NCBI GenBank assembly: GCA_010909165.1
Contig: VJWM01000025.1
Span: 186,001-250,000, forward strand
Origin: Anthoceros angustus
Taxonomy: Eukaryota; Plantae; Anthocerotophyta
Direction: 5' to 3'
DNA length: 64,000 nucleotides
Below are positions 5,357 through 51,010 of this stretch, in pieces. The first letter of the stretch is position 1; each line of letters opens with the position of its first letter. The position numbers and the translations under genes were made by a program. The notes under the pieces were generated by a model that saw only the letters and a list, made by a program, of their open reading frames with translations, was not told the DNA's origin and made no database searches.

Positions 5357-8300
5357 CCCTACTAGAAATGGCAGCCCATGAAGGGCCATTGTTGCAATTT
5401 TATGTTACACTTTCAAATTGCAACAAGCTATGTAGGCTTGGTATTAAGTTTGACACTATTCCCTTCTCATTTTGTCACCATCTTAACACGAACTGACTCT
5501 CCTCATCACCTCACCCTCCTAAGTACACCTCTCTCTCTCACAAGCATTGTTTATGATTTCAAACATATACTATGCAAACTATGTTATGAGTCCTTTGTTA
5601 CAATTTCATGTAACACTTTCCATTTGGAACACTCATTAAGTTAGTTGGCTTGGTGTTAAGTTTGTGATACTCTTCTCCACCTTCTCTCACCATCTTAACA
5701 ACATGCAAGTGGTCTTGACCTTACACCTCACCATTAAGAGCTTAGCATTAAGTTTGTTGGCTTGGTGTTAAGTTTGTGATTTTCTTCTCACCTTCTCTCA
5801 CCATCTTAACAACTCGCCTTTGGTCTCTCCTTTCACCTCACACTCCTAGTTAATGCTCCAAAGTATGACACCCATTTTATAATTTTTCCCTCTTTGTGTT
5901 GCAACATGTGTTCCCCTCTCACGCTATTATTTTATTCTTCCCTCTTGCTTTTCCTACATGATGAGAACCAGAACTCTATCTCTCCCTGTGGTTGTCATTC
6001 TCTTTCCATTTTGCCTCCTTTGCATAGCTATGCATTTATAATCTACCTTCCTCTTCAATGCACCCTTGTGTCCACATCCGGTTTTGTTTTTAAGCTCCAC
6101 ATACACAATTGAAAACTCTTGTTTTACGATTATGTATAGTAGGATTCTAGATTATTTATATGTCTATCTATATATGGTTTGCAGCCCACTTGTTGTGTAT
6201 ATTCCTATATATATATTGAAATACGTATTTATGTATATATATATATGTATTTATACTTGTATATACTTGTAACCTAAACATAATATTATTTACCTATGTC
6301 TAAGTTCGTGCGAGGCTCACTCTACGACGGAGGCGGGAGAGGAGGAGGAGGAGAGGAGGAGGAAGAGGAGAGGGAGGAGGAAAAGGGGAGAGGGGAGAGG
6401 TAGAGGAGGAGGAGGAGGAGGAGGAGGCGAGAGGAAGGAGGAGGAGGGGGAAAGCGAAAGGACAGAGGGGAGATTATAAGGAGGAGGAGGGAAGATGGAA
6501 AGAAGAGGAGCAAGAGGAGGGGAGAAGGAGGAAGAGGAGGGGAGATGGAGGAGGAGGGGAGAGGAAAGGAAGAGGAGGAGGCCCGTTCCATGTGATTTCC
6601 GCCTCAAATTTTCGATAACTAGTGTGACACTGACGTTGGTGAAGGGATGGTGGCGGGATCACGGTACAGCCAAAAGCGATCTTGTACTTGCAGAGCATTG
6701 CAAGGTCGCCAAGACTTGTTCCAATCGTGATTTCCTCTCAAATTTTCAGTCAGCTAACTAGCTAGTGTGATTTGATGTTAGACAAGGAGGCAAGGAGGAA
6801 AAGGGGAGAGGGATCGAGGTAGAGGAGGAGGAGGAGGAGGAGGAGGAGGAGGAGGAGGAGGGAGGCGAGAGGGAAGGAGGAGGAGGAAAGCGAAGGATGA
6901 GGGGAGATTATAAGGAGGAGGAGGAAGATGGAAAAGAAGAGGAGCAAGAGGAGGGGAGAGGGGAAGAGGAGGGGGAGATGGGAAGGAGGAGGAGGGGAGA
7001 GGAAAGGAAGAGGAGGCCCGTTCCATGCCGTGATTTCCGTCAAATTTTCAGCCGATGCGTAACGGGTGACACACGTTGGTGAAGGGATGGTGGCGGGCGG
7101 GATCACGTGTACAGCAGAGATCTTGTGCTTGCAGAGCATTGCAAGGTCAGGCCAAGACTTGTTCCAATCGCGTGATTTCCTCAAATTTTCAGCAGAACTA
7201 GCTAGTGTGATTTGATGTTAGACAAGGCAAAAGGAGGAAAAGGGGAGAGGGATCCGAGGTAGAGGAGGAGGAGGAGGAGGAGGAGGAGGAGGAGGAGAGG
7301 AGGAGAGGGAAGGAGGAGGAGGGGAAAGCGAAAGGACAGGAGGGGAGATTATAAGGAGGAGGAGGAAGATGGAAAAGAAGAGGAGCAAGAGGAGGGGAGA
7401 GGGAGGAAGAGGAGGGGAGATGGGAAGGAGGAGGAGGGGAGAGGGAAAGGAAGAGGAGGAGGCCCGCTCCATGCCGTGATTTCCGCCTCAAATTTTCACC
7501 GATGCGAACCAGTGACACGACGCTGGTGAAGGGATGGGTGGCGGGATCACGCAACACCGCAAGCATCTTGTACTTGCGAGCATTGCAAGGTCGTGCCAAG
7601 ACTTGTTCCAATCGTGATTTCCTCTCAAATTTTCATCAATTAACTAGCTAGTGTGATTTGATGTTAGACAAGGCGATAGGCAAGGAGGAAAAGGGGAGAG
7701 GGATCCGAGGTAGAGGAGGAGGAGGAGGAGGAGGAGGAGGAGAGAGGAGGAGAGGGAAGGAGGAGGAGGGAAAGGAAGGAGGACAGGAGAGGGGAGAGGA
7801 GAGGGGAGATTATAAGGAGGAGGAGGAAGATGGAAAAGAAGAGGAGCAAGAGGAGGGGAGAGGGGAGGAAGAGGAGGGGAGATGGGAAGGAGGAGGAGGG
7901 GAGAGGAGGAAGAGGGAGGGCCCATGCCGTGATTTCAAAGATGCTCGCCGTGATTTCCGTCTCAAATTTTCACGATGCGTAACCAGTGACACGACATTGG
8001 TGAAGGGATGGTGGGGGATCACACAAGCGATCTTGTACTTGCAGAGGCAAGGTCGTGCCAAGACTGCTCCAATCGTGATTTCCTCAAATTTTCAATTGAT
8101 GCGTAACTAGCTAGTGTGATTTGATGTTAGAAGCGATAGTAGCATGGCGGGGTGTCTCGTACATGTACAATCGCAAGTAGTTGCAAGGTCGTGCCAAGAC
8201 CCATTCCATGTCGTTATTTCCTATCTCAAATTTTCAGATGCGTAACTGCACTATGATGTGAAGTTAGGAAGGCGATGGAAGAATGGGGTCTCATGTACAT

Positions 8301-11711: not shown

Positions 11712-14700
11712 CTACTAGAAATGGCAGCCCATGTTATAGTCATTGTTGCAATTTTATGTTACACTTCAAATTGCAACAAGCTATGTAGGCTTGGTATTAA
11801 GTTTGACACTATTCCTTCTCATTTTGTCACCATCTTAACAGAACTCGACTCTCCTCATCACCTCACCCTCCTAAGTACACCTCTCTCTCACAAGCATTGT
11901 TTATGATTTCAAACATATACTATGCAAACTCGCTTATGTTATCCTTTGTTACAATTTCATGTAACACTTTCCATTTGGAACACTCATTAAGTTAGTTGGC
12001 TTGGTGTTAAGTTTGTGATACTCTTCTCCACCTTCTCTCACCATCTTAACAACATGCAAGTGGTCTGTTGACCTTACACCTCACCATTAAGAGCTTAGCA
12101 TTAAGTTTGTTGGCTTGGTGTTAAGTTTGTGATTTTCTTCTCCACCTTCTCTCACCATCTTAACAACCTGCCTTTGGTCTCTCCTTTCACCTCACACTCC
12201 TAGTTAATGCTCGATGACACCCATTTTATAATTTTTCCCTCTTTGTGTTGCAACATGTGTTCCCCTCTCACGCTACTATTTTATTCTTCCCTCTTGCTTT
12301 TCCTACATGACAAGAACAGAACTCTATCTCTCTCTCATGGTTGTCATTCTCTTTCCATTTTGCCTCCTTTGCATAGCTATGCATTTATAATCTACCTTCC
12401 CTCTTCAATGCACCCTTGTGTCCACATCCGGTTTTGTTTTAAGCTCCACATACAATTGAAAACTCTTGTTTTACCGATTATGTATAGTAGGATTCTAGAT
12501 TATTTATATGTCTATCTATATATATGGTTTGAGTGCCCACTTGTTGTGTATATTCCTATATATATATATATATATATATTTATGTATATATATATATGTA
12601 TTTATACTGTATATACTTGTAACCTAAACATAATATTATTTACCTATGTCTAAGTTCTGGGTGCGAGGCTCACTCTGCTCGGAGGCAAGGAGGAGGCGGG
12701 GGAGAGGAGGAGGAGGAGAGGAGGAAGAGGAGGAGGCAAGGAGGAAAAGGGGAGAGGATGAGGTAGGAGGAGGAGGAGGAGGAGGGAGGAGAGGAAGGAG
12801 GAGGAGGGAAAGGAAGGACAGGAGGGGAGATTATAAGGAGGAGGAGGAAGATGGAAAAGAAGAGGAGCAAGAGGAGGGGAGAAGGAGGAAGAGGAGGGGA
12901 GATGGGAAGGAGGAGGAGGGGAGAGGAAAAGGAAGAGGAGGAGGCCATGCCGTGATTTCCTCAAATTTTGATGCGTAATTAGTGTGACATGACGTTGGTG
13001 AAGGGATGGTGGCGGGGCGATCACGTAATACCGCAAGGATCTTGTACTTGCAGAGCATTGCAAGGTCGCCAAGACTTGTTCCAATCGTGATTTCCTCTCA
13101 AATTTCATGCGTAACTAGCTAGTGTGATTTGATGTTAGACAAGGCAGGCAAGGAGGAAAAGGGGAGAGGATCCGAGGTAGAGGAGGAGGAGGAGGAGGAG
13201 GAGGAGGAGGAGGAGAGGAGAGAGGAAGGAGGAGGAGGGAAAGCGAAGGACAGGAGGGGAGATTATAAGGAGGAGGAGGAAGATGGAAAAGAAGAGGAGC
13301 AAGAGGAGGGGAGAGGAAGGAAGAGGAGGGGAGATGGGAAGGAGGAGGAGGGGAGAGGGAAAGGAAGAGGAGGCCTGCTCGTGATTTCTCCAAATTTTCA
13401 CCGATGCGAATTGTGACACGCCACAGGTGAAGGGATGGTATATGATCACGCAGACAAGATCTTGTACTTGCAGAGTACACAAGGTCGTGCCAAGACTTGT
13501 TCCAATACTGTGATTTCTCTCAAATTTTCAGCTAAACTAGCTAGTGTGATTTGATGTTAGACAAGGCGATAGGCAAGGAGGAAAAGGGGAGAGGGATCCG
13601 AGGTAGAGGAGGAGGAGGAGGAGGAGGAGGAGGAGGAGGAGAGGGGAGGCAGAGGAAGGAGGAGGAGGGGGAAAAGGACAGGAGGGGAGATTATAAGGAG
13701 GAGGAGGAAGATGGAAAAGAAGAGGAGCAAGAGGAGGGGAGAGGGGAGGGGAGGAGGAGATGGGAAGGAGGAGGGGAGAGGGAAAGGAAGAGGAGGAGGC
13801 CTGCTCCATGTGATTTCCCCAAATTTTCGTTGATGACCGTGTGACACTGGTGAAGGGATGGATGGCGGGGCGGATCACGGTACGAAAGTGATCTTGTGCT
13901 TGCAGAGCAGGTCGTGCCAAGACTTGTTCCAACACTGATTTCTCTCAAATTTTCAAAGGCGTAACTAGCTAGTGTGATTTGATGTTAGACAAGGCGATAG
14001 GCAAGGAGGAAAAGGGGAGAGGGATCCGAGGTAGAGGAGGAGGAGGAGGAGGAGAGAGGAGGAGAGGAAGGAGGAGGAGGGGGAAAGGAGAGGGGAGGAG
14101 GGGAGGAAGGAAGGAGGGGAGGGGAGGAGGAGGAAGATGGAAAAGAAGAGGAGCAAGAGGAGGGGAGAGGGGAGGAAGAGGAGGGGAGATGGGAAGGAGG
14201 AGGAGGGGAGAGGGAAAGGAAGAGGAGGAGGCCCGTTCCATGCCGTGATTTCAAGTAAAGACCGCTCCATGTGTGATTTCTAGTCTCAAATTTTCATGAT
14301 GCGTAACCAGGTGACATGATTGGTGAAGGGATGGTGGCGGATCACGTGTACCGCGATCTTGTACTGGTAGCATTGCAAGGTCGCCAAGACCGCTCCAATC
14401 GTGATTTCCTCTCAAATTTTCAGTCTTGCGTAACTAGCTAGTGTGATTTGATGTTAGAGAAGGCGATAGTAGCATGGCGGGGTGTCTTGTACATGTACAA
14501 TCGCAAGTAGTTGCAAGGTCGTGCCAAGACCCATTCCATGCCGTTATTTCCTATCTCAAATTTTCAAATGCACTATGATGTGAAGTTAGGGAAGGCGATG
14601 GAAGAATGGGGGTCTCATGTACATGTATAGTCAGCAAGGTGAGGCCAAGACCCATTCCATGCCGTGATTTCCTACCTCAAAATTTTATTTGATGCGAACT

Positions 14701-24278: not shown

Positions 24279-24558
24279 GGCAAAACAGCCTCTAGCCAAT
24301 ATATCTTCATCAAAGATTCCAGTGCGTCCACTTGACAACGGCTCCGTTCTCACTTCCAATCAACTTCCTTTCTTCATCGTACTTAGGTACGGGAGGAGAT
24401 CCATTCGATTCTGATTGTCTAAATGTTGTGATGTGGTTAACAATCTACTGTACATACATATGTAGGTCCATCTCTCAGTTTGGACCGGCATGGAAAAAAG
24501 ATCACATCCAAGAGAATAAGCAGCATTCCTTCGCGTTGGACACTGGCTGGGCATCATT

Positions 24559-27500
24559 TCACGGTCGACCCCTGCAACTGCAACAACCAGCTACGAATCG
24601 ATGCACACGGTACCCATCCCTTACAACAATGTCTCTCTGTTCAAGCCTTGACATGATCTCCGTGGAACTGTGGCAGTCACTGCACATGCGTAAATTCTTC
24701 GTTACCACAAGAGGTGTGCCGCTCGGAGTATTCAAGAGACCAAACGCCAGAGCTAGCTTCTCAGCATGTCCACAAAGCAGATCTTCCTTTCCCTGCTCAC
24801 ACATTGGCTTCAACACCAAATTTGTGTGAGGTACGTGGCCTCCTTCCTGCATCAGACGTTTGTTCGTGCTCTCTACCTTAACTGTAATCTCCTCCCTTCT
24901 TTCCCCCACCAGAAATCTGTGTACCTGCTTTTTCACCTCAATTGTGGCCACAGCAGGTTTCTTGTTTGCTCCTGCTTCCATTCTCTGCGTTTCAATCCTG
25001 TCTACATCACTCCACATACCTGCCTCTGCGAAAGCATTGGCCATGAGCACATACGCAGAAGCCCATAGCGGATCCAGACTAATGATGCTTTCAAAACACC
25101 ACATCGCCCTCTCGATATCACCGTGATTTTTGCAAGCATTCAACAAAGATGTCAAGCCCACGACGTTCCTTTGGCCTTCACATGATGATAACATCTTCTC
25201 TGCCTCATCTAAATGGCCAGCACGCCCAAGAAGATCGATCATGCAATTGTAATGCTCAACTGTAGGTTTGATGCCATACTGTTCAGCCATGGAATCAAAG
25301 TGCTTGCGACCCTCTGGACCAGTCATGACTGCATGCTACTAGAAGGCAAGTAAAAGTAGCACCATCAGGCTGAATACCGGCAACTAACATCTCCTCAAAA
25401 CAAGCTAGTGCCTTGTGACCTTCATCACAAGTACCATACCCAGATATCAGGGCATTCCATGTCACCACATTCTTTGTGGCCAAGCTGTCAAAAACCTGGC
25501 GTGCATCTTCCAGTTCACCACATTTTGCATACATGTCCACTCAGTGTGTTCAAGAGACCAAACGCCAGAGCTAGCTTCTCAGCATGCCCACAAAGCGCAT
25601 CTTCCTTTTCCTTCTCACACAGTGGCTTCAACACCAACTTTGTGTGGTGTATCCTTCCTGCTTCAGACGTGCATTCGTGCTCTACCTTAACGCAATATCC
25701 TCTTCTTTCTCCCACCAGAAATCTGTGTACCTGCTTATTCACCTCAATGGTCGCCACTGCAGGTTTCTTGTTAGCTCCTGCATTCTCTGTGTTTCAATCC
25801 TGTCTACATCGGTCCACCTACCTGCATCTGCATAGGCATTGGCCATGAGCACATACGCAGACGCCCTGGGTCCAGCCTAACAATGCTTTCAAAACACCAC
25901 ATCGCCCTCTATATCCCCGTGACTTTTGCAGGCATTCAACAAAGACGTCAAGCCCACAACATTACTTTGGCCTCACATGATAATAGCATCTTCTCTGCCT
26001 CATCTAAATGGCCTGCACGCCCAAGAAGATCAATCATGCAATTGTAATGCTCAATAGTAGGTTTGATGCCATGCTGTTCAGCCATGGAATCAAAGTGCTT
26101 GCGACCCTCGTGGACCAGTCCTCATGACTGCATGCTACTAGAAGGCAAGTAAAAGTAGCATCATCAGGCTGAATACCGGCAACTAACATCTCCTCAAAAC
26201 AAGCTAGTGCCTTGTGACCTTCATCACAAGTACCATACCCAGATATCAGGGCATTCCATGTCACCACATTCTTTGTCATGCTGTCAAAACCTGGCGTGCA
26301 TCTTCCAGTTCACCACATTTTGCATACATGTCCACCAGGCAGTTGCCCAACACTACGTTATCCAGCAGTCCTCTTTCGACAATCTGTGAGTGCAGCTGCC
26401 TGCCCTTCTGTAAGGCACCAGTGCTTGCACAGGCCTTCAGAAGGCAAGCAAAAGTAACATGGTCAGCCAAAATGAGGCCCTCTGCTCCATTTGTCCATAC
26501 AGAACAAGCGCCTCTTGGCGAGTCCTTGCTGTGCATACCCAGCAATCAGGGCATTCCATGTCACCACATCCTTTGGCCAAGCTGTCAAAAACCTGGCGTG
26601 CATCTTCCAGTTCACCACATTTTGCATACATGTCCACCAGGCAGTTGCCCACCAGTATCATCCAGCAGTCCTCTTTCACAATCTGTGAGTGCAGCTGCCT
26701 GCCCTTCTGTAAGGCACCAGTGCTTGCACAGGCCTTCAGAAGGCAAGCAAAAGTAACATGGTCAGCCAAAATGAGGCCCTCCTGCTCCATTTGTCCATAC
26801 ACAACAAGCGCCTCTTGGCGAGTCCTTGCTGTGCATACCCAGCAATCAGGGCATTCCATGTCACCACATCCTTTGGCCAAGCTGTCAAAAACCTGGCGTG
26901 CATCTTCCAGTTCACCACATTTTGCATACATGTCCACCAGGCAGTTGCCCACCAGTATGTCATCCAGCAGTCCTCTTTCAATCTGTGAGTGCAGCTGCCT
27001 GCCCTTCTGTAAGGCACCAGTGCTTGCACAGGCCTTCAGAAGGCAAGCAAAAGTAACATGGTAAAATGAGGCCCTCTGCTCCATTTGTCCATACAGAACA
27101 AGCGCCTCTTGGCGAGCCCTTGCTGTGCATACCCAGCAATCAGGGCATTCCATGTCACCACATCCTTTGTGGCCAAGCTGTCAAAAACCTGGCGTGCATC
27201 TTCCAGTTCGCCACATTTTGCATACATGTCCACCAGGCAGTTGCCCACCAGTATGTTATCCAGCAGTCCTCTTTCCACAATCTGTGAGTGCAGCTGCCTG
27301 CCCTTCTGTAAGGCACCAGTGCTTGCACAGGCCTTCAGAAGGCAAGCAAAAGTAACATGGTCAGCCAATCAGGCCTCCTGCTCCATTTGTCCATACACAA
27401 CAAGCGCCTCTTGGCCGAGCCCTTGCTGTGCATACCCAGCAATCAGCGCCGTCCATGTCACCACATCCTTTGCCGCCAAGCTTTCAAAAACCTGGCGGGC

Positions 27501-28544
27501 ATCTTTCAGTTCACCACATTTTGCATACATGTCCACCAGGCCGTTGCCAACAAACAAGGTAATAGGAATGCCACTGTGCAACACATCACAGTGCACTTTC
27601 CTGCCAGATTCCAAGTCGGCGGCAAATGAACAAGCTTGAAGGGCAGCCACAAAGACATGAGCATCAGCCTTCACTTCTGACCTGCACATCTCATGGTACA
27701 GTTGTATGGCCTCATAAGGTTTCCCCTGCTTGGCATGTGCAGAGATTATGGAAAACCACATGAACACATCTGGTTTCCCCACCCTGGTGAACACATCCAT
27801 GGCCTCTTGCAGCCTACCTCCACATGCATACATGCGCAAGATATGGTTTCCCAAATATGCATTCGACTCGTACCCTAGTTTGACAGTGAGATCATGAACT
27901 CGGCGCCCCACAACCAGATCCTTCTTAGCTTCACACAGTTTTAGGACAGTGTAAAACAGAGACCGAGAAACAGCAGAACCTGTCTGCGCCAGAGATTCCA
28001 GGGCTCCAACGGCCTCAGAAAGCCTCCCCTGCTGACATAACGTGCGCACGGTTACAGCCGTTACGACGCCCACTTCCGATCTTGCACGCCTGCCAGCGTC
28101 AGGCTCATGGGAAGAGCTCGATTTGGAAGGAGAGGCACCTTGACCCATGTGCTTATCCAAGGAAACGAGCTGCTCATCAACCCAAGCTGGCTTAAACATG
28201 CTGTTTAACCACAGGACCTCGCCAGACCCCTTACGCCGGAAGTCAGGCGAACGGGAGCTCTTCTTATCTCGTCTGTTGTCCCACCACATAGGAGGGTCCA
28301 GAAAAAATTGTTGCCACAATCGCTCCTGCTCCTGGCGACGACCATCGCTGCAATATCTGTCCCGACCCACGCAGTTTCTCGGAAGTGGGTGTGCTGGGCT
28401 CCTTACAATGCTGCAGCTCGAGGTTTGGCTGTTTGCCGGTGGTCGACTCCCTAATGTAAGGTGAGCGGGAGCTTCTTGTAGAATCCCTGTACACACAGCA
28501 ATTTGTTGGGTCCACAATGGGTCCAGTTGCCAGACTGTGGCCAT
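24559..28544 (-). CDS. PLS-class PPR protein with N-terminal PDF motif and DYW:KP (GRP) deaminase domain, unit A; the C-terminal module is duplicated
   Basis: One 391-aa frame (27369-28544) runs from the ATG through [47 protein letters not shown] into PPR repeats. Five DMYAKC repeats follow. C-terminus has [10 protein letters not shown]...GHAEKLA...CSDCH...GCCSCRGRP*. The middle is broken by indels. Confidence 0.9.
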
Positions 28545-29189
28545 CTTTCAGGGACCGCAGTCGGAAGATGAGTCAAACAACATCGTTCAGGGACCGCCGT
28601 CGCAAGAAAAGTACCAGCAGGCTATCGCTGGATGCCCAAGTACTGATAAGGATAACACCACACCACACCACACCACTCTCAATGTGGACACTGCAGACGC
28701 TTTTTCACGGCAGGGGCGTTTGGAACCCCGGCGGCCCGGCCTCGTCTTCCGGTCCCTCGGGTGCCCGCCGTGTGATTAAACATGCATGGACGACCGTCAA
28801 GTATGGCTTACACTCCCATGAGGCATGGATTCCCGCGGTTGCCATCATGTATGGCTGACCCTCCCATGAGGCATGAATTCCCTAGTTTTGGCGGCGCATG
28901 TGAATGCGGAAGCTGGAGCCTGGGAGATACGAAATTTGAGCTTCAGGAAACTTTTCGCACCCCGGAGAGGAAAACCTTCAGGCAAGCCATGAATCCCACC
29001 CGAGACCTGTCCGCGTAACCCAGGAAGCGAGAGTCATTCGATGCTGATGACCTCTGCTACGATGAGAGGTGGATCAGTCAATTAGCCCGTCCAATGCTCA
29101 TGTCTCAGTTTGGACAGGGATACATTCACCCCAATTCAAAGACATTCTCTGGCGTACGCACTTGAGCACTGTCAAATTTTTCATTTTTC

Positions 29190-30926
29190 TCACGGTCGAC
29201 CCTTACAACTGCAACCACCAGCTGCTAATCGAGGCACAAGGTACCCGATGCCTTACAGCGATGTCTCTCTGTTCAAGCCTTGACATGATCTCCGTGGAAC
29301 TGTGTCAGTCACTGCACATGCGTAGATTCTTAGTTACCACCAGAGGTGTCCCACTCGGAGTGTCCAAGAGACCAAACGTATGCCAGAGCTGGCTTCAGCA
29401 TGCCACAAAGCACATCTTCCCTTTTCTTCTCACACAGCACCAACTTCGTGTGAGGACCGTGGCCTCCGTCCTCCTTCAGCCGTGCGTTCGTGCTCTCTAC
29501 CTCAAGTGCGATATCTTCTGTTCTTTCTCCCACCAGAAATTCATGGTCCTGCTTATTCACCTCGATGTTTTCCACTGCAGGTTTCTTGTTAGCTCCTGCT
29601 ACCATTCCCTGTGATTCAATCCCGTCTACAAAGACCCACCTAACTGATCTGCGTAGGCATTGGCCATGAGCACATACGCAGACAACCTTCGAGGGTCCAG
29701 CCTAACAATGCTTTCAAAACACCTCATAGCCCTCTCTATATCCCCATGACTTTTGCACGCATGCAACAAAGACGTCAAACCCACAACATTACTTTGGCCC
29801 TCCCATGACAATAGCATATTCTCCGCCTCATCTTCAAAACAAGCTAGTGCGCTGTGACCATCATCACAAGCACCATACAAAAATATCAAGGCAATTCATG
29901 TTACCACATCCTTTGTGGCCAAGCTGTCGAAAACCTGGCGTGCAGCTTCCAGGGTGCCACATTTTGCATACATGTCTACCAGGCCGTTGTCCAAAACTAC
30001 CCAGCAGTCCAATGGACAATCTGCGATTGCAGCTGCGTGCTCTTCTGTAAGTCGCCAGTGCTTGTACAGACAGGCCTTTAGAAGGCGAGCAATTGTGATG
30101 TTGTCAGCCAAGACTAGGCCCTCCTTCTCCATTTGTTCATACACAACGAGCGCCTCATCTCCGAGCCCTTGCTGGGTATACCCAGCAAAACATGAAGACA
30201 CTTGGTTTGCCCACCCTGGTGTACACATCCATGGCCACTTGCAGCCTACCTCCACATGCATACATGCGCAAGATATGGTTCCCCAGGCATACATTCCACT
30301 CGTACCCTAGTTTGACAGTGACATCATGAACTCGCTGCCCCGCAACCAGATCCTTCTTAGCTGCACACAATTTTAGCACGATATAAAACAGAGTCTGAGA
30401 AATAGCAGAATCTGTGTGCGCCAGAGATTCCAGGGCCGCAACGGCCTCCCCTGCTGACACAACGTGCGCACGGATACGACGCCCATTCCCGATCCGGCAC
30501 GCTTGCCAAGTTCAGGCTAATCCGGAGGCACCATGATCCATCTGCATATCCAAGGAAATCAGCTGACCATCAACCCAAGCTGGCTTCGGCATGCTGTCCA
30601 ACCACAGGACCTCGCCGGACCCCAAACGCCGGAAGTCAAGCGAACGGGAGCTCCTCTTGTTTCGTCTGTTGTCCCACCACATGGTAGGGTCCAGGAAAAA
30701 ATGTTGCCACCATCGCTCTTGCTCCTTCTCCTGCCGACGACCATCGCTCGAATATCGGCCCCAACCCACACATCTCTTAGAAGTGTACACTGCAGGACCT
30801 GGAGGCTTGGATGTTTATCGGGGGTTGCCTCTCTAAAGTAAGGTGACCGGGAGCTTCTCATACGATTCCTCTATACACAGCAATTTGTTGGGTCCACATT
30901 GGGTCCGGTTGCCATACTGTGGCCAT
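29190..30926 (-). pseudogene. Short, degenerate PDF-PPR-DYW:KP (GRP) paralogue, unit B
   Basis: ATGGCCACAGTATGG start. [38 protein letters not shown] motif. Only one DMYAKC repeat, deletions, KKPAVENIEV, and a terminal CSCKGRP*. Confidence 0.8.
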
Positions 30927-39256: not shown

Positions 39257-42200
39257 ATGGCCACTGTATGGCAACCGGACCCTTTATGGACCCAACAAAT
39301 TGGTGTGTGCACAGGGATCCTGCGAGAATCTCCGGCTCACCTCACCCTGGCAAACGAAGGCTCCAGGTGCAGCAGCGTAAGGAGCCCAGCACTTCCACTT
39401 TTGGCAGAATGTGTGGGTGGGGACGGTTTCTCCAGCGATGGCCGTCGCCAGGAGCAGGAGAACTTGTGGCAACAATTTTTTCTGGACCCTACCTTGTGGT
39501 GGGACAACAGACGAGATAAGAACAGCTCCCGTTCGCCTGACTTCCGGCGTAAGGGGTCCGGCGAGGTCCTTTGGTTAAACAGCATGCTCAAGCCAGCTTG
39601 GGTCGATGAGCAGCTCCTTTATTTGGATATGCAGATGGGTCATGATCCGCCTCCTTCCAAGCCGAGCTCTCTGGATAAGCCTGAACCTGGCAGGCGTGCA
39701 GTGTCGGAAATAAGCGTCGTAACGCTGGAACCGTGAGCATGTTATGTCAGCAGGGAAGCTTTCTGAGGCCGTTGGAGCCCTGGAATCTCTGGCGCAGACA
39801 GACTCTGCCATTTCCCAGTCTCTGTTTTACACTGTGCTAAAACTGTGTACAGCTAAGAAGGATTTGGTTGTGGGGCGACGAGTTCATGATCTCACTGTCA
39901 AACTTGGGTACGAGTCGAATGCATACTTGGGGAACCATATCTTGCGCATGTATGCATGTGGAGGTAGGCTGCAGGAGGCCATGGATGTGTTCACCAGGGT
40001 GGCAAACCAGATGCCTTCATGTGGTTTTCCATAATATCTGCACATGCCAAGCAGGGGAAACCTAATGAGGCCATACAACTGTACCATGAGATGCGTAGGT
40101 CAGGAGTGAAGGCGGATGCTCACGTCTTTGCAGCTGCCCTTCAAGCTTGTGCATTTGCGCCGACTTGGAATCTGGCAGAAAAGTGCACTGTGATGTGTGC
40201 ACAGTGGCATTCCTCTGACTTGTTTGTTGGCAACTGCCTGGTGGACATGTATGCAAAATGTGAACTGAAGATGCACGCCAGGTTTTTGACAGCTTGGCCA
40301 CAAAGGATGTGGTGACATGGACGCCTGATTGCTGGGTATGCCCAGCAAGGCTTGGACGAGGCGCTTGTTGTATATGGACAAATGGAGCAGGAGGGCCTGA
40401 TGGCTAACCATGTTACTTTTGCTTGCCTTCTGAAGGCCTGTGCACACTGGTGCCTTAGAAGGGCAGGCAGCTGCACTCACAGATTGTGAAGAGGACTGCT
40501 ACAATATATTGGTGGGCAACTGCCTGGTGGACATGTATGCAAAATGTGGTGAACTGAAGATGCACGCCAGGTTTTTGACAGCTTGGCCACAAAGGATGTG
40601 GTGACATGGAATGCCCTGATGCTGGGTATGCAGCAAGGACTTGGCCAAGAGGCGCTTGTTCTGTATGGACAAATGGAGCAGGAGGCCTCATTTTGGCTGA
40701 CCATGTTACTTTTGCCTTCTGAAGGCCTGTGCAAGCACTGGTGCCTTACAGAAGGGCAGGCAGCTGCACTCACAGATTGTGGAAAGAGGACTGCTGGATA
40801 CGTAGTGGTGGGCAACTGCCTGGTGGACATGTATGCAAAATGTGGTGAACTGGAAGATGCACGCCAGGTTTTTGACAGCCACACAAGGATGTGGTGACAT
40901 GGACCCTGATTGCTGGGTATGCACAGCAAGGACTTGGCCAAGAGGCGCTTGTTCTGTATGGACAAATGGAGCAGAGGCCTCATTTTGGCTGACCATGTTA
41001 CTTGCTTGCCTTCTGAAGGCCTGTGCAAGCACTGGTACAGAAGGGCAGGCAGCTGCACTCACAGATTGTGAAGAGGACTGCTGGATAACGGGGGCAACTG
41101 CCTGGTGGACATGTACGCAAAATGCGGTGAAGTAGAAGAAGCACAACAGGTTTTTGACAGCTTGGCCGTAAAGGATGTAGTGACATGGAATGCCCTGATA
41201 GCTGGGTATGCACTGCAAGGACTTGGCCACGAGGCCCTTGTCCTGTATGGACAAATGGAGCAAGAGGGCCTCATTTTGGCTGACCATGTCACTTTTGCTT
41301 GCCTTCTAAAGGCCTGTGCAAGCACTGGTGCCTTACAGATTGGGAGGCAGCTGCATTCACAGATTGTTGCAAGAGGACTTCTGGATGACGTTGTGTTGGG
41401 CGACTGCCTGGTGGACATGTATGCAAAATGTGGTGAACTGGGAGAGGCACGCCAGGTTTTTGACAGCTTGGCCACAAAGGATGTGGTCACGTGGAATGCC
41501 CTGATATCTGGGTATGGAACTTGTGATGATGGTCACAGAGCACTAGCGTGTTTTGAGGAGATGTTAGTTGCCGGTATTCAGCCTGATGGTGCTACTTTCA
41601 CTTGCCTTTTAGTAGCATGCAGTCATGAGGGATTGGTCCAGGAGGGTCGCAAGCACTTTGATTCCATGGCTGATCAGCATGGCATCAAGCCCACAATTGA
41701 GCATTACAATTGCATGATTGATCTTCTTGGGCGTGCCGGCCATCTAGATGAGGCAGAGAAGATGCTATCATCATGTGAAGGCCAAAGTAATATTGTGGGC
41801 TTGACATCTTTGTTGAATGCTTGCAAAAGTCATGGCAATATAGAAAGGGCAGTATGGTGTTTTGAAAGCATTGTTAAGCTGGACCCTCAATGGGCATCTG
41901 CGTACGTGCTCATGGCCAATGCCTACGCAAATGCAGGAAGGTGGAGCGATGTAGACAGGATTGAAACACAGAGAATGGTAGCAGGAGCTATCAAGAAACC
42001 TGCAGTGGCAAGCATTGAGGTGAATAAGCAAGTACACAGATTTCTGGTGGGAGAAAGAAGAGAGGATATTGCACTTCAGGTAGAGAGCACGAATGCACGT
42101 CTGAAGCAGGAAGGAGGACACGTACCTCACACAAAATTAGTGCTGAAGCCAGTGTGTGAGAAGGAAAAGGAAGATATGCTTTGTGGGCATGCTGAGAAGC

Positions 42201-42397
42201 TAGCTCTGGCGTTTGGTCTCTTAAACACCCCGAGTGGCACGCCCCTTGTGGTAACGAAGAATCTACGCATGTGCAGTGACTGCCACAGTTCCACGGAGAT
42301 CATGTCAAGGCTTGAACAGAGAGACATTGTTGTAAGGGATGGGTACCGTGTGCATCGATTCGCAAATGGTTGTTGCAGTTGCAATGATAGGCCATGA
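39257..42397 (+). CDS. PLS-class PPR protein with N-terminal PDF motif and DYW:KP domain ending DRP, unit C
   Basis: MATVWQPDPLW... then [38 protein letters not shown]. Five DMYAKC repeats. Intact 430-aa C-terminal frame (41105-42397) with E1/E2, KKPAVASIEV, GHAEKLA, CSDCH and GCCSCNDRP*. Frameshifts in the 5' half may be assembly errors. Confidence 0.92.
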
Positions 42398-43720: not shown

Positions 43721-44944
43721 CTATTCTCCAGTGAGCTTGTTTGCGAAGGCTGGCGGCAGGCTGGTATGCACATTCCAGGATGGCACAGGCACGGAGTCGT
43801 CGTCTTGTTGAGGAGCGAAGCCCATGGCCTGGTCCATCTGCTTGACGGTCTTGACGGCGGCCAGTGTAGGAGACGCATCCACTCCCTCTCTCCCTTCATC
43901 GTACAGATCGAACCACGGCAAACCGTAAGACGCATACGTCTTGGCCGACACTGGCGATTCCGGAGGAGCCTCTCCCGTGATGTCCCGCCACATGGCTGAG
44001 TTGCACAGATGCACGAAAACCCTGGCGTATGTGGATTGATCCCACACCTGCAACCCGTGCGTGTCAGCGTATATCTCCTGCCGCATGCTGCCTCCCGCTC
44101 CCAGCCCCATTTCCATGCCGCCTGCCTTCATTAAGACCTCTTCTCCTGAACGTTCTTCTACGGCTCCTGAACACTTGCGTGGCGCAAAACTCTCTTCTGC
44201 CGAATAGTCGAATGCAACTTCCAGCGGTGGACCACAAGACTCTCCTCCCGGTGCAGAGACGCAGAATGCGGATGGTGCCGCTATAGCTTCAGCAGCTGCG
44301 GTGTGGTAGCAGAATTTGGGAGGCGTACTCGTGTGGCCTCCGTCGGCTTCATACCTAGGCGGAGGAGAGGGATGGTCCGGGAACACTCCAGCCTTGGGCT
44401 CGAAGACGCAGATCTGGAGGCCGCCGTGTTTCTCCTGGCCAGTCACCTGGCCTTCAACAGTGTACCCCATCCCTAGCGGCATAGCGATGAACTGGCTGAT
44501 GGTGTCTTTGCCGGAGTTGATGCCATCCAGCCAGGGCTGCGAGGGGAGCACCAGGTAGTCCTGCGGCTCCGGATCCCCGTGCAGCTCCTCCGACCACGGC
44601 TTCCCCGTGAGCGCGCACACCTTTCCTACAGCCAGTTTCATGGCGTTAGGCTTCCAGGGCCTGCCGCCGAATCGGAGCCACATGGCCTCCCGTTGGAACA
44701 TTGGGAGGAACACCCCGCCATGCCTGCGCCAGCTCCTCGGCACCTTGTCGGCGTAATCCGCCACTCTCCGGATGGGGTAGTAGCCCAGGCCTGGCGGGAG
44801 GGGGTACGTGTTGTTGTCATCGGGGACTCGTAAGGTCCGGTTGAAGTGGATGGTCACTCCTTCCCCGATCCGCAGCGTGTCGCCGTTCTCCACCTCCACT
44901 CCCAGATCCGTCCTGCCTTTGCCCTCGCTGTTTGACTCGGCCAT
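43721..44944 (-). CDS. Intronless 407-aa protein of an uncharacterised bacterial/fungal-type family
   Basis: Uninterrupted ORF with motifs FNRTLRVPDD..YPLPPGLG, PMFQREAMWLRF, QDYLVLPSQPWLDG..QFIAMPLGMGYTVEGQVTG.EKHGGLQ, MGLGAGGSMRQEIY.D and YGLPWFDLYDE. I recall these from hypothetical proteins of soil bacteria and filamentous fungi (not database-checked). Confidence 0.8.
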   Translation of the reverse strand: MAESNSEGKGRTDLGVEVENGDTLRIGEGVTIHFNRTLRVPDDNNTYPLPPGLGYYPIRRVADYADKVPRSWRRHGGVFLPMFQREAMWLRFGGRPWKPNAMKLAVGKVCALTGKPWSEELHGDPEPQDYLVLPSQPWLDGINSGKDTISQFIAMPLGMGYTVEGQVTGQEKHGGLQICVFEPKAGVFPDHPSPPPRYEADGGHTSTPPKFCYHTAAAEAIAAPSAFCVSAPGGESCGPPLEVAFDYSAEESFAPRKCSGAVEERSGEEVLMKAGGMEMGLGAGGSMRQEIYADTHGLQVWDQSTYARVFVHLCNSAMWRDITGEAPPESPVSAKTYASYGLPWFDLYDEGREGVDASPTLAAVKTVKQMDQAMGFAPQQDDDSVPVPSWNVHTSLPPAFANKLTGE

Positions 44945-45199: not shown

Positions 45200-46601
45200 A
45201 CAGAGCATTTCGTGTGGTGGCTTCATTGGAGCCCGCAGTGCTTCCACAGGCCTTCAGAAGGCAAGCATTAATAACGCCGTCAGGCAGGGTGGGGCTTTCC
45301 TGCTCCAACTGCCCGTACAGAAGAAGCGCCTCTTGGCCAAGGTCCTTGCTGTGCATACCCAGAAATCAGGGCATTCCACGTCACCACATCTTTTGTAGCC
45401 AAGCTGTCAAAAACCTGGCGTGCATCTTTCAGTTCACCACAATTTGCATACATGTCGACCACGCAGTTGGCCACCAGTGTGTGCTCCAGCAGTCCTCTTT
45501 CCACAATCTGTGAGTGCAGCTGCCTGCCCTTCTGTAAGGCACCACTGCTTCCACAGGCCTCCAGAAGGCAAGCGAAGGCGACATGGTTAGCCAAAATGAG
45601 GCCTTGTTCCATTTGTCCATACGGAACAAGCGCCTCTTGGCCGAGTCCTTGCTGTGCATACCCAGCAATCAGGGCATACCATGTCACCACATCCTTTGTG
45701 GCCAAGCTTTCAAAAACCCATCGTGCATCTGCCAGTTCACCACATTGTGCATACATGTCCACCAGGCAGGTGCCCACCAGGCGAGGTCCTGTGGCTGAAC
45801 AGCATGTTTAGGCCAGCTTGGGTTAATGAGCACCTCGTTTCCTTGGATATGCACATGGGTCATAGTGCCTCTCCCTCCAAGTTGGAGCCCTGGAATCTCT
45901 GGCGCAGTCGACAGACTCTGCTATTTCTGAGTCTCTGTTTTACACTGTGTTTAAACTGTGTACAGCTAAGAAGGATTTGGTTGTGGGGCGACGAGTTCAT
46001 GATCTCACTGCCAAACTTGGGTACGAGCCGAGTGCATACTTGGGGAACCATATATTGGGCAAGTATGCATGTTGAGGTCATCTTCAGGAGGCCTGTAGTA
46101 AGAGATGCGTAGGTCAAAGGTGAAGGCGAATGGTCACGTCTTTGTAGCTGCCCTTCAGGCTTGCGCATTTGCCGCCGATTTGGAATCTGGCAGGAAAATA
46201 CACTGTGATGTGGTCCACAGTGGCACTCCTATTGACTTGTCTGCTGGCAACCGCCTGGTCGGCATGTGTGCAAAATGTGGCTAAGTGAAAGATGCACGAC
46301 AGGTTTTTGAAAGCATGGCCAATAAGGATGTGGTGACATGGACGGCTCTGATTGCTGGCTATGCACAGCAGGGGCTGGGCCACGAGGCACTTGTTGTGTA
46401 TGAACGAAGGGAACAGGAGGGCCATGTTACTTATGTTTGCCTTCTGAAGGCCTGTGCAAGCGCTGGTGCCTTACAGAAGGGCAGGCAGCTGCACTCACAG
46501 ATTGTTGAAAGAGGATCCCCTTACGCCTGAAGTCAGGCGAACGGCTGCACGAACATCAATTTGTTGGGTCCACAACGGGCCCGGTGTCATGCTGTGGCCA
46601 T
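45200..46601 (-). pseudogene. Rearranged PDF-PPR paralogue (unit D) with an internal inversion and no DYW domain
   Basis: Minus-strand start ATGGCCACAGCATG at 46601 and SPDFRRKGS at about 46515-46545. The continuation [15 protein letters not shown] and PPR repeats lie on the plus strand at 45780-46515. PPR repeats resume on the minus strand at 45780-45200. Confidence 0.8.
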
Positions 46602-48427: not shown

Positions 48428-51010
48428 TCAAGGTCGACCCTGACAACTGCAAGAACCACCTGTGAATCGATGCACACGGTACCCATCCCTCACAACAATG
48501 TCTCTCTGTTCAAGCCTTGACATGATCTCCGTGGAACTGTGGCAGTCACCGCACATGCGTAGATTCTTCGTCACCACCAGAGGTGTCCCACTCAGGTGTT
48601 CAAGAGACCAAACGCCAGAGCTAGCTTCTCAGCATGCCCACAAAGCACATCTTCCTTTTCCTTCTCACACAGTGGCTTCAACACCAACTTTGTGTGAGGT
48701 CCTCCTTCCTGCTTCAGACGTGCATTCGTGCTCTCTACCTTAAGCAATATCATCTCTTCTTTCTCCCACCAAATCTATGTACCTGCTTCTTCACCTCAAT
48801 GGTCGCCATTGCAGGTTTCTTGTTAGCTCCTGCCACCATTCTCCGTGTTTCAATCCTGTCTACATCGGTCCACCTACCTGCATCTGCGTAGGCATTAGCC
48901 ATGAGCACGTACGCAGACGCCCTTTGAGGGTCCAGCCTAATAATGCTTTCAAAACACCACATCGCCCGCTCTATGTCGCCGTAACACTTGCAGGCATTCA
49001 ACAAAGACCTCAACCCCACAACCTTACTTTCGCCCTCACAAGTCAGTAACATCTTCTGTGCCTCTTCCAAATGGCCTGCACGCCCGAGAAGATCAACCAT
49101 GCAGGTGTAATGCTCAATACCAGGTTTGATGCCATGCTGTTCAGCCATGGAATCAAAGTGCTTGCGACCATCGTGGACCAGTCCCGCATGACTGCATGCT
49201 TCTAGAAGGCAAGTAAAAGTAACACCATCAGGCTGAATGCCGGCAACTAACATCTCCTCAAAACAAGCTAGTGCTCTGTGACCATCATCACAGGTACCAT
49301 ACCCAGATATCAGGGCATTCCATGTCACCACATCCTTTGTGGCCAAGCTGTCAAAAACCCGGCGTGCAGCTTCCAGTTTGCCACATTTTGCATACATGTC
49401 CACCAGGCAGTTGCCCAACACTACGTTATCCAGCAGTCCTCTTTCAACAATCAGTGAGTGCAGCTGCCTGCCCTTCTGTAAGGCACCAGTGCTTGCACAG
49501 GCCTTCAGAAGGCAAGCAAAAGTAACATTAGCCAAAAAGAGGCCTCCTCCATTTGTCCATACACAACAAGCGCCTCCGAGTCCTTGCTGCAGCAATCAGG
49601 GCATTCCATGTCACCACATCCTTTGTGGCCAAGCTGTCAAAAACCTGGCGTGCATCTTCCAGTTCACCACATTTTGCATACATGTCCACCAGGCAGTTGC
49701 CCACCAGTATGTCATCCAGCAGTCCTCTTTTGACAATCTGTGAGTGCAGCTGCCTGCCCTTCTGTAAGGCACCAGTGCTTCCACAGGCCTTTAGAAGGCA
49801 AGCAAAAGTAACATGGTCAGCCAAAATCAGGCCCTCTTGCTCCATTTGTCCATACACAAGCGCCTCTTGGCTGAGCCCTTGCTGTGCAGCAATCAGGGCG
49901 TCCATGTCACCACATCCTTTGTGGCCATGCTGTCAAAAACCTGGCGTGCATCTTTCAGTTCGCCACATTTTGCATACATGTCCACCAGGCAGGTGCCAAC
50001 AAACAGGTCAGGAGGAATCCCACTGTGCAGCACATCAGAGTGCACTTTTCTGCCAGTTTCCAAGTCGGCAGCAAATGCACAAGCCTGAAGGGCAGCTACA
50101 AAGACATGCCCATTGGGCTTCAATCCTGACCTACGCATCTCATGGTACAGTTGTATGGCCTGTTCAGGCATCCCATGCTTTGAGTATGCGGACATCATGG
50201 AAAAGCACAAGAAGACATTTGGTTTCCCCACCCTGGTGAACACATCCATGGCCTCCTGCAGCCGACCTCCACATGCATACATGCGCAAAATATGGTTCCC
50301 CAAGTACGCATCCGACTCGTACCCAAGTTTGACAATGAGGTCATGAACTCGTCGCCCCACAACTACATCCTTCTTAGCTGCACACAGTTTTAGAACGGTG
50401 TAAAACAGAGGCTGAAATAGCAGTCTGTCTGCGCCAGAGATTCCAGGGCTCCAACGGCGTCAGAAAGCTTCCCCTGCTGACATAACGTGCGCACGGTTCC
50501 AGCTGTTACGACTCCCATTTCCGATCCTCCACGCCTGCCAGGTTCAGGCTTATCTGGAGAGGTGGAGTTAGAAGGAGAGGCACCATGACCCATCTGCATA
50601 TCCAAGGAAACTAGCTGCCCATCAACCCAAGCTGGCTTACACATGCTGTTTAACCACAGGACCTTGCCGGACCCCTTATGACGGAAGTCAGGGGAGCGGG
50701 AGCTCTTCTTATCTCGTCTGTTGTCCAACCACATGGCAGGGTCCAGAAACAATTGTTGCCACAAGAGCTCCGGCTCCGGCTCCGGCTCCTGCTCCTGGCA
50801 ACGACCATCGCTGGAAAATCCGTCCCCACCCACATACTTCCTTGGAAGTGCAAGTGCTGGGCTCCTTAGACTGCTGAACCTGGAGGCTTGGTTGTGTGCC
50901 TGGGGTTGACTCCCTACCGTGAGATGAGCGGGAGCTCCCTCCAGTGGGATCCCTGTGCACACACCACTTTGTTGGGTCCACAACGTGTCCGGCTCCCATA
51001 CTGAGGCCAT
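48428..51010 (-). CDS. PDF-PPR-DYW:KP (GRP) paralogue, unit E
   Basis: MASVWEPDTLW...[48 protein letters not shown]. Three DMYAKC repeats. E1/E2, KKPAMATIEV, HAEK region and terminal GGSCSCQGRP*. Several single-base frameshifts. Confidence 0.88.

What the first reader, a model, noticed from the sequence alone, without database searches (positions are those of the whole stretch)
27369..28544. OSB-type PDF ssDNA-binding motif fused to the N-terminus of DYW:KP (putative U-to-C) PPR editing factors
Seen: after a ~65-aa Ser/Arg-rich leader, unit A reads [51 protein letters not shown] in the same uninterrupted 391-aa frame as the PPR repeats. The motif is conserved in B (about 30560-30720), C (39460-39620) and E (50620-50770), and split in D. 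Established: this matches the ~50-aa PDF motif at the C-terminus of plant organellar OSB proteins (Arabidopsis OSB1-4/pTAC9), implicated in ssDNA binding. KPAxA/HAEK/GRP-type DYW domains are the class linked to U-to-C editing in hornworts, ferns and lycophytes. Inference: the architecture transit peptide-PDF-PLS-E1/E2-DYW:KP may tether reverse editing to nucleoids or transcription bubbles, act on ssDNA/R-loops, or give a built-in non-specific nucleic-acid clamp in a lineage lacking MORF/RIP cofactors. I am not aware of this fusion having been described.
Basis: partly seen in the sequence, partly recalled or inferred. Interest (0 to 1): 0.92.

Follow-up and report, generated by a model that had tools for sequence, protein, structure and literature searches.

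The report
OSB-type PDF domain on PPR editors
A small nucleic-acid-binding module known from plant organellar DNA-maintenance (OSB) proteins sits at the front of a cluster of RNA-editing (PPR) genes; the pairing is old, common in seedless plants and apparently undescribed, but it is not special to U-to-C editors and every copy in this window is broken.

Summary
ORF 27369-28544 (-) reads, in one frame, conserved start, leader, a 51-aa PDF motif (28167-28319), linker and PPR repeats. Copies lie at 30560-30712 (-), 39464-39616 (+) and 50612-50764 (-); unit D is split.

A profile built only from PDF motifs of OB-fold (OSB-architecture) proteins hits the four copies at E 1e-17 to 1e-21. An AlphaFold model of the module matches only Arabidopsis OSB1-4 among reviewed proteins (TM up to 0.83), and no solved structure.

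The fusion is not tied to DYW:KP. Of 33 PDF-carrying proteins among 120 PPR relatives, 14 are canonical DYW:PG, 14 lack a DYW domain and 2-3 are KP-like (odds ratio 0.37, p 0.29). Carriers include Diphasiastrum, Selaginella, Sphagnum, Adiantum, Ceratopteris and Pteridium. None of 28 gymnosperm relatives has it.

All units here are frame-broken pseudogenes; an intact 753-aa relative exists.

Likely role (inferred): an accessory binder of single-stranded nucleic acid on RNA 5' of the PPR target.

No paper I could search describes the fusion. This scan noted the same thing many times elsewhere in this genome, and earlier follow-ups reached the same conclusions.

The parts
27369..28544 (-). Unit A N-terminal ORF (391 aa). 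It reads: conserved start and leader (residues 1-75), PDF motif, Ser/Pro-rich linker (about 127-165), then the first PPR repeats. It ends at an in-frame TGA (27369-27371).
   Evidence: PPR hits only; Pfam has no PDF model; leader start conserved in A, B, C and E; TGA, with the same frame continuing.
28167..28319 (-). PDF motif core, unit A (51 aa).
   Evidence: OSB-only HMM gives 78 bits, E 1.5e-20. AF2 pLDDT is 90-96. The fold matches Arabidopsis OSB1-4.
24562..27368 (-). Rest of unit A. It holds a frame-shifted PLS array, including a 300-bp tandem amplification (26234-27548). It also holds a duplicated partial E/DYW piece (25536-26121) and a terminal E2/DYW:KP part (24562-25314) with KKPAVA, HAEK and CSDCH, ending in GRP.
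   Evidence: (frames -3, -2, -1 and stops relative to intact P0098). Contigs of relatives carry one extra base at the breaks 26119 and 26285.
30560..30712 (-). PDF motif core, unit B. The unit (about 29194-30926) is heavily decayed.
   Evidence: 68 bits; 8 stops in the main alignment.
39464..39616 (+). PDF motif core, unit C. The unit spans 39257-42397. Its N-terminal half is broken; the C-terminal 430-aa ORF (41105-42397) is intact with PPR, E motif and DYW:KP.
   Evidence: (80 bits).
50612..50764 (-). PDF motif core, unit E. The unit spans 48431-51010 and has at least five frame switches.
   Evidence: (78 bits).
45780..45860 (+). Unit D: the C-terminal half of a PDF motif. The other piece (SRSPDFRR plus a leader fragment) lies at 46519-46578 on the opposite strand, so D is a rearranged fragment.

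Best explanation
Shown:
- The window holds a tandem cluster of five to six nuclear PLS-class PPR editing-factor genes of the DYW:KP type.
- Each coding frame begins with a conserved start and leader. A genuine OSB-type PDF domain follows, of about 65 folded residues arranged as helix, three short strands, helix. A flexible linker of 30-40 aa then leads into the PPR array.
- The domain shares sequence and predicted fold with the PDF domains of Arabidopsis OSB1-4, but there is no OB fold. These are therefore PPR proteins that acquired a PDF domain, not OSB proteins.
- The same PDF-PPR layout, with one to three PDFs, occurs on DYW:PG, DYW-less and DYW:KP proteins. Carriers are a peat moss, lycophytes and ferns.
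- PPR-borne PDFs group together against OSB PDFs, which is compatible with one old fusion.
- Within the family the PDF core evolved under purifying selection like the PPR repeats.
- At this locus every copy is broken by premature stops, frameshifts and tandem amplification of PLS triplets. Nothing functional is expected here.

Inferred mechanism (about 45% likely):
- PPR arrays bind RNA with their N-terminus towards the RNA 5' end. A tethered N-terminal PDF would therefore contact single-stranded RNA just upstream of the recognised element.
- There it would add sequence-independent affinity, or keep the site unfolded. It would act as a built-in accessory binder in plants that lack MORF proteins.
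For: Identity of the motif:
- The motif-only profile finds 672 proteins at E <= 1e-3. Of the best 150, 79 have an OB fold followed by PDFs, including Populus 'protein OSB1' at 1e-25.
- The reciprocal OSB-only HMM hits the window copies at E 1e-17 to 1e-21.
- The AF2 model is confident (pLDDT 87-96). Its only significant Swiss-Prot fold matches are OSB1-4.

Fusion real and widespread:
- Unit A and the intact 753-aa P0098 each read the fusion as a single ORF.
- A Pteridium transcript ORF carries PDF plus PPR.
- 33 of 120 PPR relatives carry PDF.
- The motif tree needs 5 label changes against 46 when labels are shuffled. The AU test for one clade gives p 0.88.

Selection:
- PDF core dN/dS is 0.18-0.39 among window copies and about 0.1 against P0098. 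The linker gives 0.5-1.2.

Pseudogene status.

Mechanism context:
- The OSB1 PDF is sufficient for ssDNA binding (review PMC6963530).
- RNA upstream of the PPR footprint enhances editing by PPR56 (PMC10482289).
- MORF genes occur only in seed plants (PMC13386178). None of 28 gymnosperm PPR relatives has PDF.
Against: - No binding, localisation or editing data exist for any PDF-PPR protein.
- OSB1 and OSB2 prefer ssDNA over RNA (PMC4166229), so RNA binding is an assumption.
- AF2 gives no confident docking of PDF on the PPR solenoid; the linker has pLDDT below 50.
- No RNA evidence for this locus. Two raw RNA-seq runs gave 0 reads, and the 'RNA?' contig sets also cover intergenic DNA.
- Absence from seed plants rests on a small, biased sample. 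Only the best 150 of 672 motif hits could be inspected.
- The source organism was not identified by me.
Confidence: 0.7

Rival explanations
1. First reader's reading. The PDF is a specific adaptation of U-to-C (DYW:KP) editors. It tethers reverse editing to nucleoids, transcription bubbles or R-loops by binding ssDNA.
For: - The window family is KP-type and carries PDF.
- OSB PDF domains bind ssDNA preferentially.
- The intact KP-type P0098 and P0183 carry PDF.
Against: - 14 DYW:PG and 14 DYW-less PPR proteins carry PDF, and 9 KP proteins lack it. Odds ratio 0.37, p 0.29.
- Selaginella carries the fusion on a PLS-E protein. From general knowledge, Selaginella is known for C-to-U editing only.
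- There are no localisation data.
Confidence: 0.1
2. The PDF on PPR proteins is mainly a protein-protein or oligomerisation module, or a sorting/import determinant. It would then not be a nucleic-acid binder.
For: - OSB2 forms tetramers.
- The module is a compact helix-sheet-helix unit on a flexible tether.
- Some proteins carry 2-3 or up to 13 copies.
Against: - The residues invariant across OSB and PPR copies are aromatic and basic (W, WWDNR, K, PDF, K, LW, P.W). This is the usual make-up of single-strand binders.
- The OSB1 PDF alone binds ssDNA.
Confidence: 0.12
3. Chance similarity, or an annotation or assembly artefact that joins an OSB fragment to a PPR gene.
For: - All copies in the window are decayed.
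- Fern and lycophyte gene models are often imperfect.
Against: - E-values are 1e-17 to 1e-21 against an OSB-only profile.
- The motif lies inside single uninterrupted ORFs in the window and in independent contigs and species.
- The start codon and leader are conserved in four copies.
- Purifying selection acts on the motif.
Confidence: 0.01

Closest known systems
[quoted passage not shown]
   Same: - The PDF domain is the same: invariant W, D, R, K, D-F and P positions.
- HMM scores are 68-80 bits.
- The predicted fold superposes on OSB1 residues 172-244 at TM 0.83.
   Different: - There is no OB-fold/SSB-like domain.
- The PDF is N-terminal, not C-terminal.
- The partner is a PLS PPR array with E and DYW domains.
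- PPR-borne PDFs form their own group in the motif tree.
PLS-class PPR editing factors with DYW:KP domains (candidate U-to-C editors of hornworts, lycophytes and ferns; basis of synthetic KP editors, PMC9478123, PMC11845758)
   Same: PLS repeats, E motif, DYW deaminase domain with KPAxA box, HAEK, CxDCH and a GRP/DRP end.
   Different: - An extra N-terminal PDF domain, which is not mentioned in the papers I could search.
- The window copies are pseudogenes.
Accessory RNA-binding partners of editing PPRs: MORF/RIP, ORRM (RRM), and RRM-PPR fusions (PMC13386178)
   Same: A second, less specific nucleic-acid-binding or helper module associated with the PPR specificity factor. Such modules are sometimes fused to it.
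   Different: - A different fold and origin.
- PDF is not among the fusions surveyed, because Pfam has no model for it.
- MORF is restricted to seed plants, whereas all PDF-PPR proteins I saw are from seedless plants.

Membership tests
PDF domain (OSB-type motif) | A motif of about 50 aa with the conserved signature W..(F/L)..P..WWDNR..K...PDF(K/R)HK..G..LW....P.W | tested here: met
   An OSB-only HMM of 169 motifs matches model positions 4-70 of 73 at 68-80 bits. The invariant columns are shared with OSB copies.
PDF domain (OSB-type motif) | Same fold as the PDF domains of the reviewed OSB proteins | tested here: met
   AF2 model pLDDT 87. Foldseek hits OSB1, OSB2, OSB3 and OSB4 at E 4e-6 to 3.5e-4 with TM 0.83-0.59. 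No other significant hit. Both sides are predictions.
PDF domain (OSB-type motif) | Binds single-stranded DNA | not testable with these tools
   Known for the OSB1 PDF only, from the literature.
OSB protein family | Central or N-terminal OB-fold (SSB-like) domain preceding the PDF domain(s) | tested here: not met
   Pfam finds only PPR/TPR families in ORF A. The PPR fusions lack the OB fold that 79 of the 150 best motif hits have.
PLS-PPR DYW:KP editing factors | PLS-type PPR array followed by E motifs and a DYW deaminase domain | tested here: met
   Pfam PPR, E_motif (PF20431) and DYW_deaminase (PF14432) in 41105-42397. Homologous segments occur in units A and E.
PLS-PPR DYW:KP editing factors | KP-type signature: KPAxA box in place of the PG box, HAE in place of HSE, and a non-DYW C-terminus (GRP/DRP) | tested here: met
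   KKPAVA, HAEKLA and C(S/G)DCH with GRP or DRP before the stop in units A, C and E.
PLS-PPR DYW:KP editing factors | Intact full-length reading frame (a functional gene) | tested here: not met
   All units change frame or carry stops relative to the intact 753-aa P0098. ORF A ends at an in-frame TGA.
PLS-PPR DYW:KP editing factors | U-to-C editing activity | not testable with these tools

The most novel reading that the evidence does not exclude
PDF-PPR is the ancestral or early layout of many land-plant editing factors. In this reading, a built-in single-strand-binding PDF domain did in cis, in bryophytes, lycophytes and ferns, what MORF-type helpers do in trans in seed plants, and it was lost when those helpers arose. 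If so, adding a PDF domain could improve guide-free synthetic PPR editors of both directions.
Probability: 0.25. Interest if true: 0.8.

Novelty: new variant of a known kind. Interest (0 to 1): 0.6.

Why it matters
PPR editing factors are studied intensively and are being engineered as programmable C-to-U and U-to-C RNA editors. An unnoticed, conserved and selected N-terminal single-strand-binding domain on many natural editors of seedless plants would be a new part of the editosome.

It would give a concrete explanation for the effect of upstream RNA on editing efficiency. It would also give a possible functional counterpart of MORF in plants that lack it.

It has probably been missed because Pfam has no PDF model. 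It also widens the known range of the PDF domain beyond OSB proteins; for example, it occurs in Selaginella, where a review lists no OSB.

The idea is directly testable with existing E. coli or moss editing assays.

Tried and rejected
- Pfam scan of the ORF and of motif B: no family covers the motif.
- ESM Atlas feature search on residues 60-140: only sub-threshold phage hits (score 0.73 or less), discarded.
- Word-indexed homology search restricted to the motif region, tried twice: no useful candidates, because the index is too coarse for a 65-aa region.
- RNA evidence for the locus was uninformative.
  - Two raw RNA-seq runs gave 0 reads.
  - Two 'RNA?' contig sets cover intergenic DNA at low depth and thousands of short paralogue pieces. 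They show DNA and family size, not transcription.
- PDB searches by sequence profile, Foldseek and VIA-align: no relative (best Z 4.9, within noise).
- KP-specific enrichment: tested and rejected.
- Zaegel 2006 and Gutmann 2020 could not be read because they are not held. A mention there cannot be excluded.
- Genomic DNA for the Ceratopteris and Adiantum models could not be fetched. Their lack of a DYW domain may therefore reflect truncated models.
- I did not establish the source organism. Earlier notes call it a probable hornwort.
Full report
**What is in the sequence**

ORF 27369..28544 (-) is a 391-aa frame. It contains the quoted 51-aa motif at residues 76-126 (28167-28319). PPR repeats follow, detected by Pfam; Pfam has no model that covers the motif itself.

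A six-frame scan finds four full copies of the motif: units A (-), B (-), C (+) and E (-). They are 74-86% identical to A. Unit D is split: a C-terminal half lies at 45780-45860 (+), and an SRSPDFRR piece with a leader fragment lies at 46519-46578 (-).

The start and leader (MATVWQ.DP.WTQQ...) are conserved in A, B, C and E. The motif therefore lies inside the coding frame from a conserved ATG.

Downstream, units A, C and E carry the DYW:KP hallmarks: KKPAxA, HAEK, CxDCH and a GRP/DRP end. Pfam confirms the E motif and DYW_deaminase in 41105-42397.

**Is it the OSB PDF motif?**

A profile of the four motif copies alone was run against 1.84 billion representative proteins. It found 672 proteins at E <= 1e-3.

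- Of the best 150, 79 have an OB-fold (SSB-like) domain, which lies N-terminal to the PDF copies (one to twelve) in 78 of them. This is the OSB architecture.
- One of them is annotated 'protein OSB1, mitochondrial-like' of Populus.

It scores the window copies at 68-80 bits (E 3e-17 to 5e-21 at Z = 1e6) over nearly the whole model. Among 1413 window segments, the only other match is a partial, non-significant one to the D remnant (16.6 bits, E 0.26).

AlphaFold2 models the module confidently, at pLDDT 90-96 in context and 87 alone. The fold is a helix, three short strands and a helix. A disordered linker and then PPR helices follow.

- Against reviewed UniProt models, the only significant fold matches are Arabidopsis OSB1, OSB2, OSB3 and OSB4 (TM 0.83-0.59).
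- The AFDB fold clusters give OSB-like proteins only.
- No solved structure matches by sequence, Foldseek or VIA-align.

The domain is a true PDF domain. The proteins are not OSB proteins, because they have no OB fold.

**Is the fusion real and how widespread is it?**

Ten of the best 150 motif hits are PPR proteins with the PDF at the N-terminus. Named ones come from Adiantum, Ceratopteris, Pteridium (a transcriptome ORF), Selaginella and Diphasiastrum.

P0098, from a 9-kb public contig, is an intact 753-aa frame with the same layout as the window units: leader, PDF, PLS, E, then DYW:KP ending in GRP. Its called start is GTG and the first ATG is codon 16.

A search with P0098 returned 120 PPR relatives, which I scanned with the OSB-only HMM. 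33 carry one to three N-terminal PDFs.

- 14 are canonical HSE...DYW (PG-type), mostly from Diphasiastrum.
- A Sphagnum fallax HSE...DYW protein also carries PDF, although my regex left its PG/KP box unclassified.
- 14 have no DYW domain.
- 2-3 are KP-like.
- Nine KP proteins lack PDF.

Fisher's test shows no KP enrichment (odds ratio 0.37, p 0.29).

The Selaginella protein is a PLS-E protein. Its gene ends 26 nt before the next gene, so it has no DYW domain.

None of 19 Ginkgo and 9 Cryptomeria relatives has PDF.

In a tree of 151 motifs, the PPR-borne and OSB labels need only 5 changes, against 46 for shuffled labels. An AU test does not reject a single PPR-borne clade (p 0.88). One old transfer of a PDF unit onto a PLS-PPR gene, followed by expansion with the family, is the simplest reading. 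It is not proven: the alignment is short.

**Selection**

Among the window copies the PDF core has dN 0.03-0.14 and dN/dS 0.18-0.39, similar to the PPR region (0.30). The linker gives 0.5-1.2, and the leader has dN of about 0.2. Against P0098 both the PDF and PPR regions give about 0.1.

The numbers are small. They are consistent with the motif having been a constrained part of the protein before these copies died.

**State of the genes here**

Measured against P0098, every unit changes frame or carries stops.

- ORF A ends at an in-frame TGA. The same frame then continues for about 90 more codons before further shifts.
- Its PLS array holds a 300-bp tandem amplification (26234-27548, 4.4 copies, 94% alike). 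Units C and E have similar arrays with periods of 289 and 286, which are not multiples of three.
- Unit A also holds a duplicated partial E/DYW piece.
- Public contigs of close paralogues carry one extra base exactly at the window's frame breaks 26119 and 26285. This fits copy-specific frameshifts; assembly error is a less likely cause.
- Two raw RNA-seq runs gave no reads. The other two runs behave like DNA. So there is no evidence that this locus is expressed.

**How it most likely works (inferred)**

- The OSB1 PDF is reported to be sufficient for ssDNA binding (review PMC6963530). OSB1 and OSB2 prefer ssDNA over dsDNA or RNA (PMC4166229).
- The residues invariant across OSB and PPR copies are aromatic and basic.
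- From established knowledge of PPR-RNA complexes, PPR arrays bind RNA in parallel, and the DYW domain acts just 3' of the footprint. A PDF tethered N-terminally by a flexible linker would therefore reach nucleic acid 5' of the recognised element.
- Work on moss PPR56 shows that native RNA upstream of the footprint strongly raises editing (PMC10482289).
- MORF helpers exist only in seed plants (PMC13386178). All PDF-PPRs I saw are from seedless plants.

I therefore favour (about 45%) an accessory, sequence-independent single-strand binder that raises affinity or keeps the site open. The alternatives are a tether to organellar ssDNA or nucleoids, and a protein-protein module.

**Literature**

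- Searches combining PDF motif or PDF domain, OSB, and PPR, pentatricopeptide or DYW found no description of the fusion.
- A 2026 survey of domain fusions in editing factors does not mention OSB or PDF.
- A 2026 OSB family study of 182 genes does not mention PPR or fusions.
- Zaegel 2006 and Gutmann 2020 could not be read.

**Earlier notes of this scan**

The same fusion has been noted many times on other pieces of this genome. 70 notes hold the search words. Several follow-up agents reached the same conclusions: real, old, widespread in seedless plants, not KP-specific, local copies broken, no paper found. I re-tested these points independently here.

**Verdict**

This is a new domain architecture of a known kind. 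The finding is of moderate to good interest as a family-level result, although this particular locus is a graveyard of copies.

Noticed in passing
window 26234-27548; also 40229-41516 and 49309-50010: Tandem amplification of a PLS triplet unit inside the PPR genes. The periods are 300, 289 and 286 bp, with 2.4-4.4 copies that are 86-94% alike. The repeats carry shared paired frameshifts, so already-damaged units were amplified.
   Followed up: partly
window 25536-26121: A second, partial E/DYW:KP piece lies inside unit A, upstream of its terminal DYW domain. It has a KPAVA box at 25766 and HAEK at 25586. This is an internal duplication of the C-terminal region.
   Followed up: no
window 43721-44944 (-): An intact 407-aa ORF in the middle of the PPR cluster with no Pfam hit at E <= 1e-3. 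Another reader flagged it as a horizontal-transfer candidate (s1-285968).
   Followed up: partly
window 7262-7460 and 12754-14233: Purine-rich GGA/GAG-type repeats, including an array with a 432-bp period and 3.4 copies. They account for the strong GC skew at 6-8 kb and 12-16 kb.
   Followed up: no
P0049 (1526 aa); AFDB A0A484M7X6 (914 aa); P0001 (1160 aa): PDF motifs also occur with other partners: a kinesin motor (three stretches) and an IBB-domain protein. They also occur as arrays of up to 13 copies. Either the domain is more mobile than thought or some gene models are merged.
   Followed up: no
L002 4001-6803 (Selaginella moellendorffii GL377648.1): A review lists OSB as not detected in Selaginella (PMC4166229). 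Yet a PDF domain is present there at the very N-terminus of a 910-aa PLS-E PPR protein (XP_024517303).
   Followed up: partly
window 24400-29000, runs X1 and X2: Thousands of short public contigs, 95-99% alike, pile up on the PPR repeats, with summed word depth up to about 2e5. This points to a very large, young PPR family in this or closely related genomes.
   Followed up: no
L001 2709-4970: The intact relative P0098 was called with a GTG start. No in-frame ATG lies between the upstream stop and codon 16, so the real protein probably starts at Met16.
   Followed up: partly
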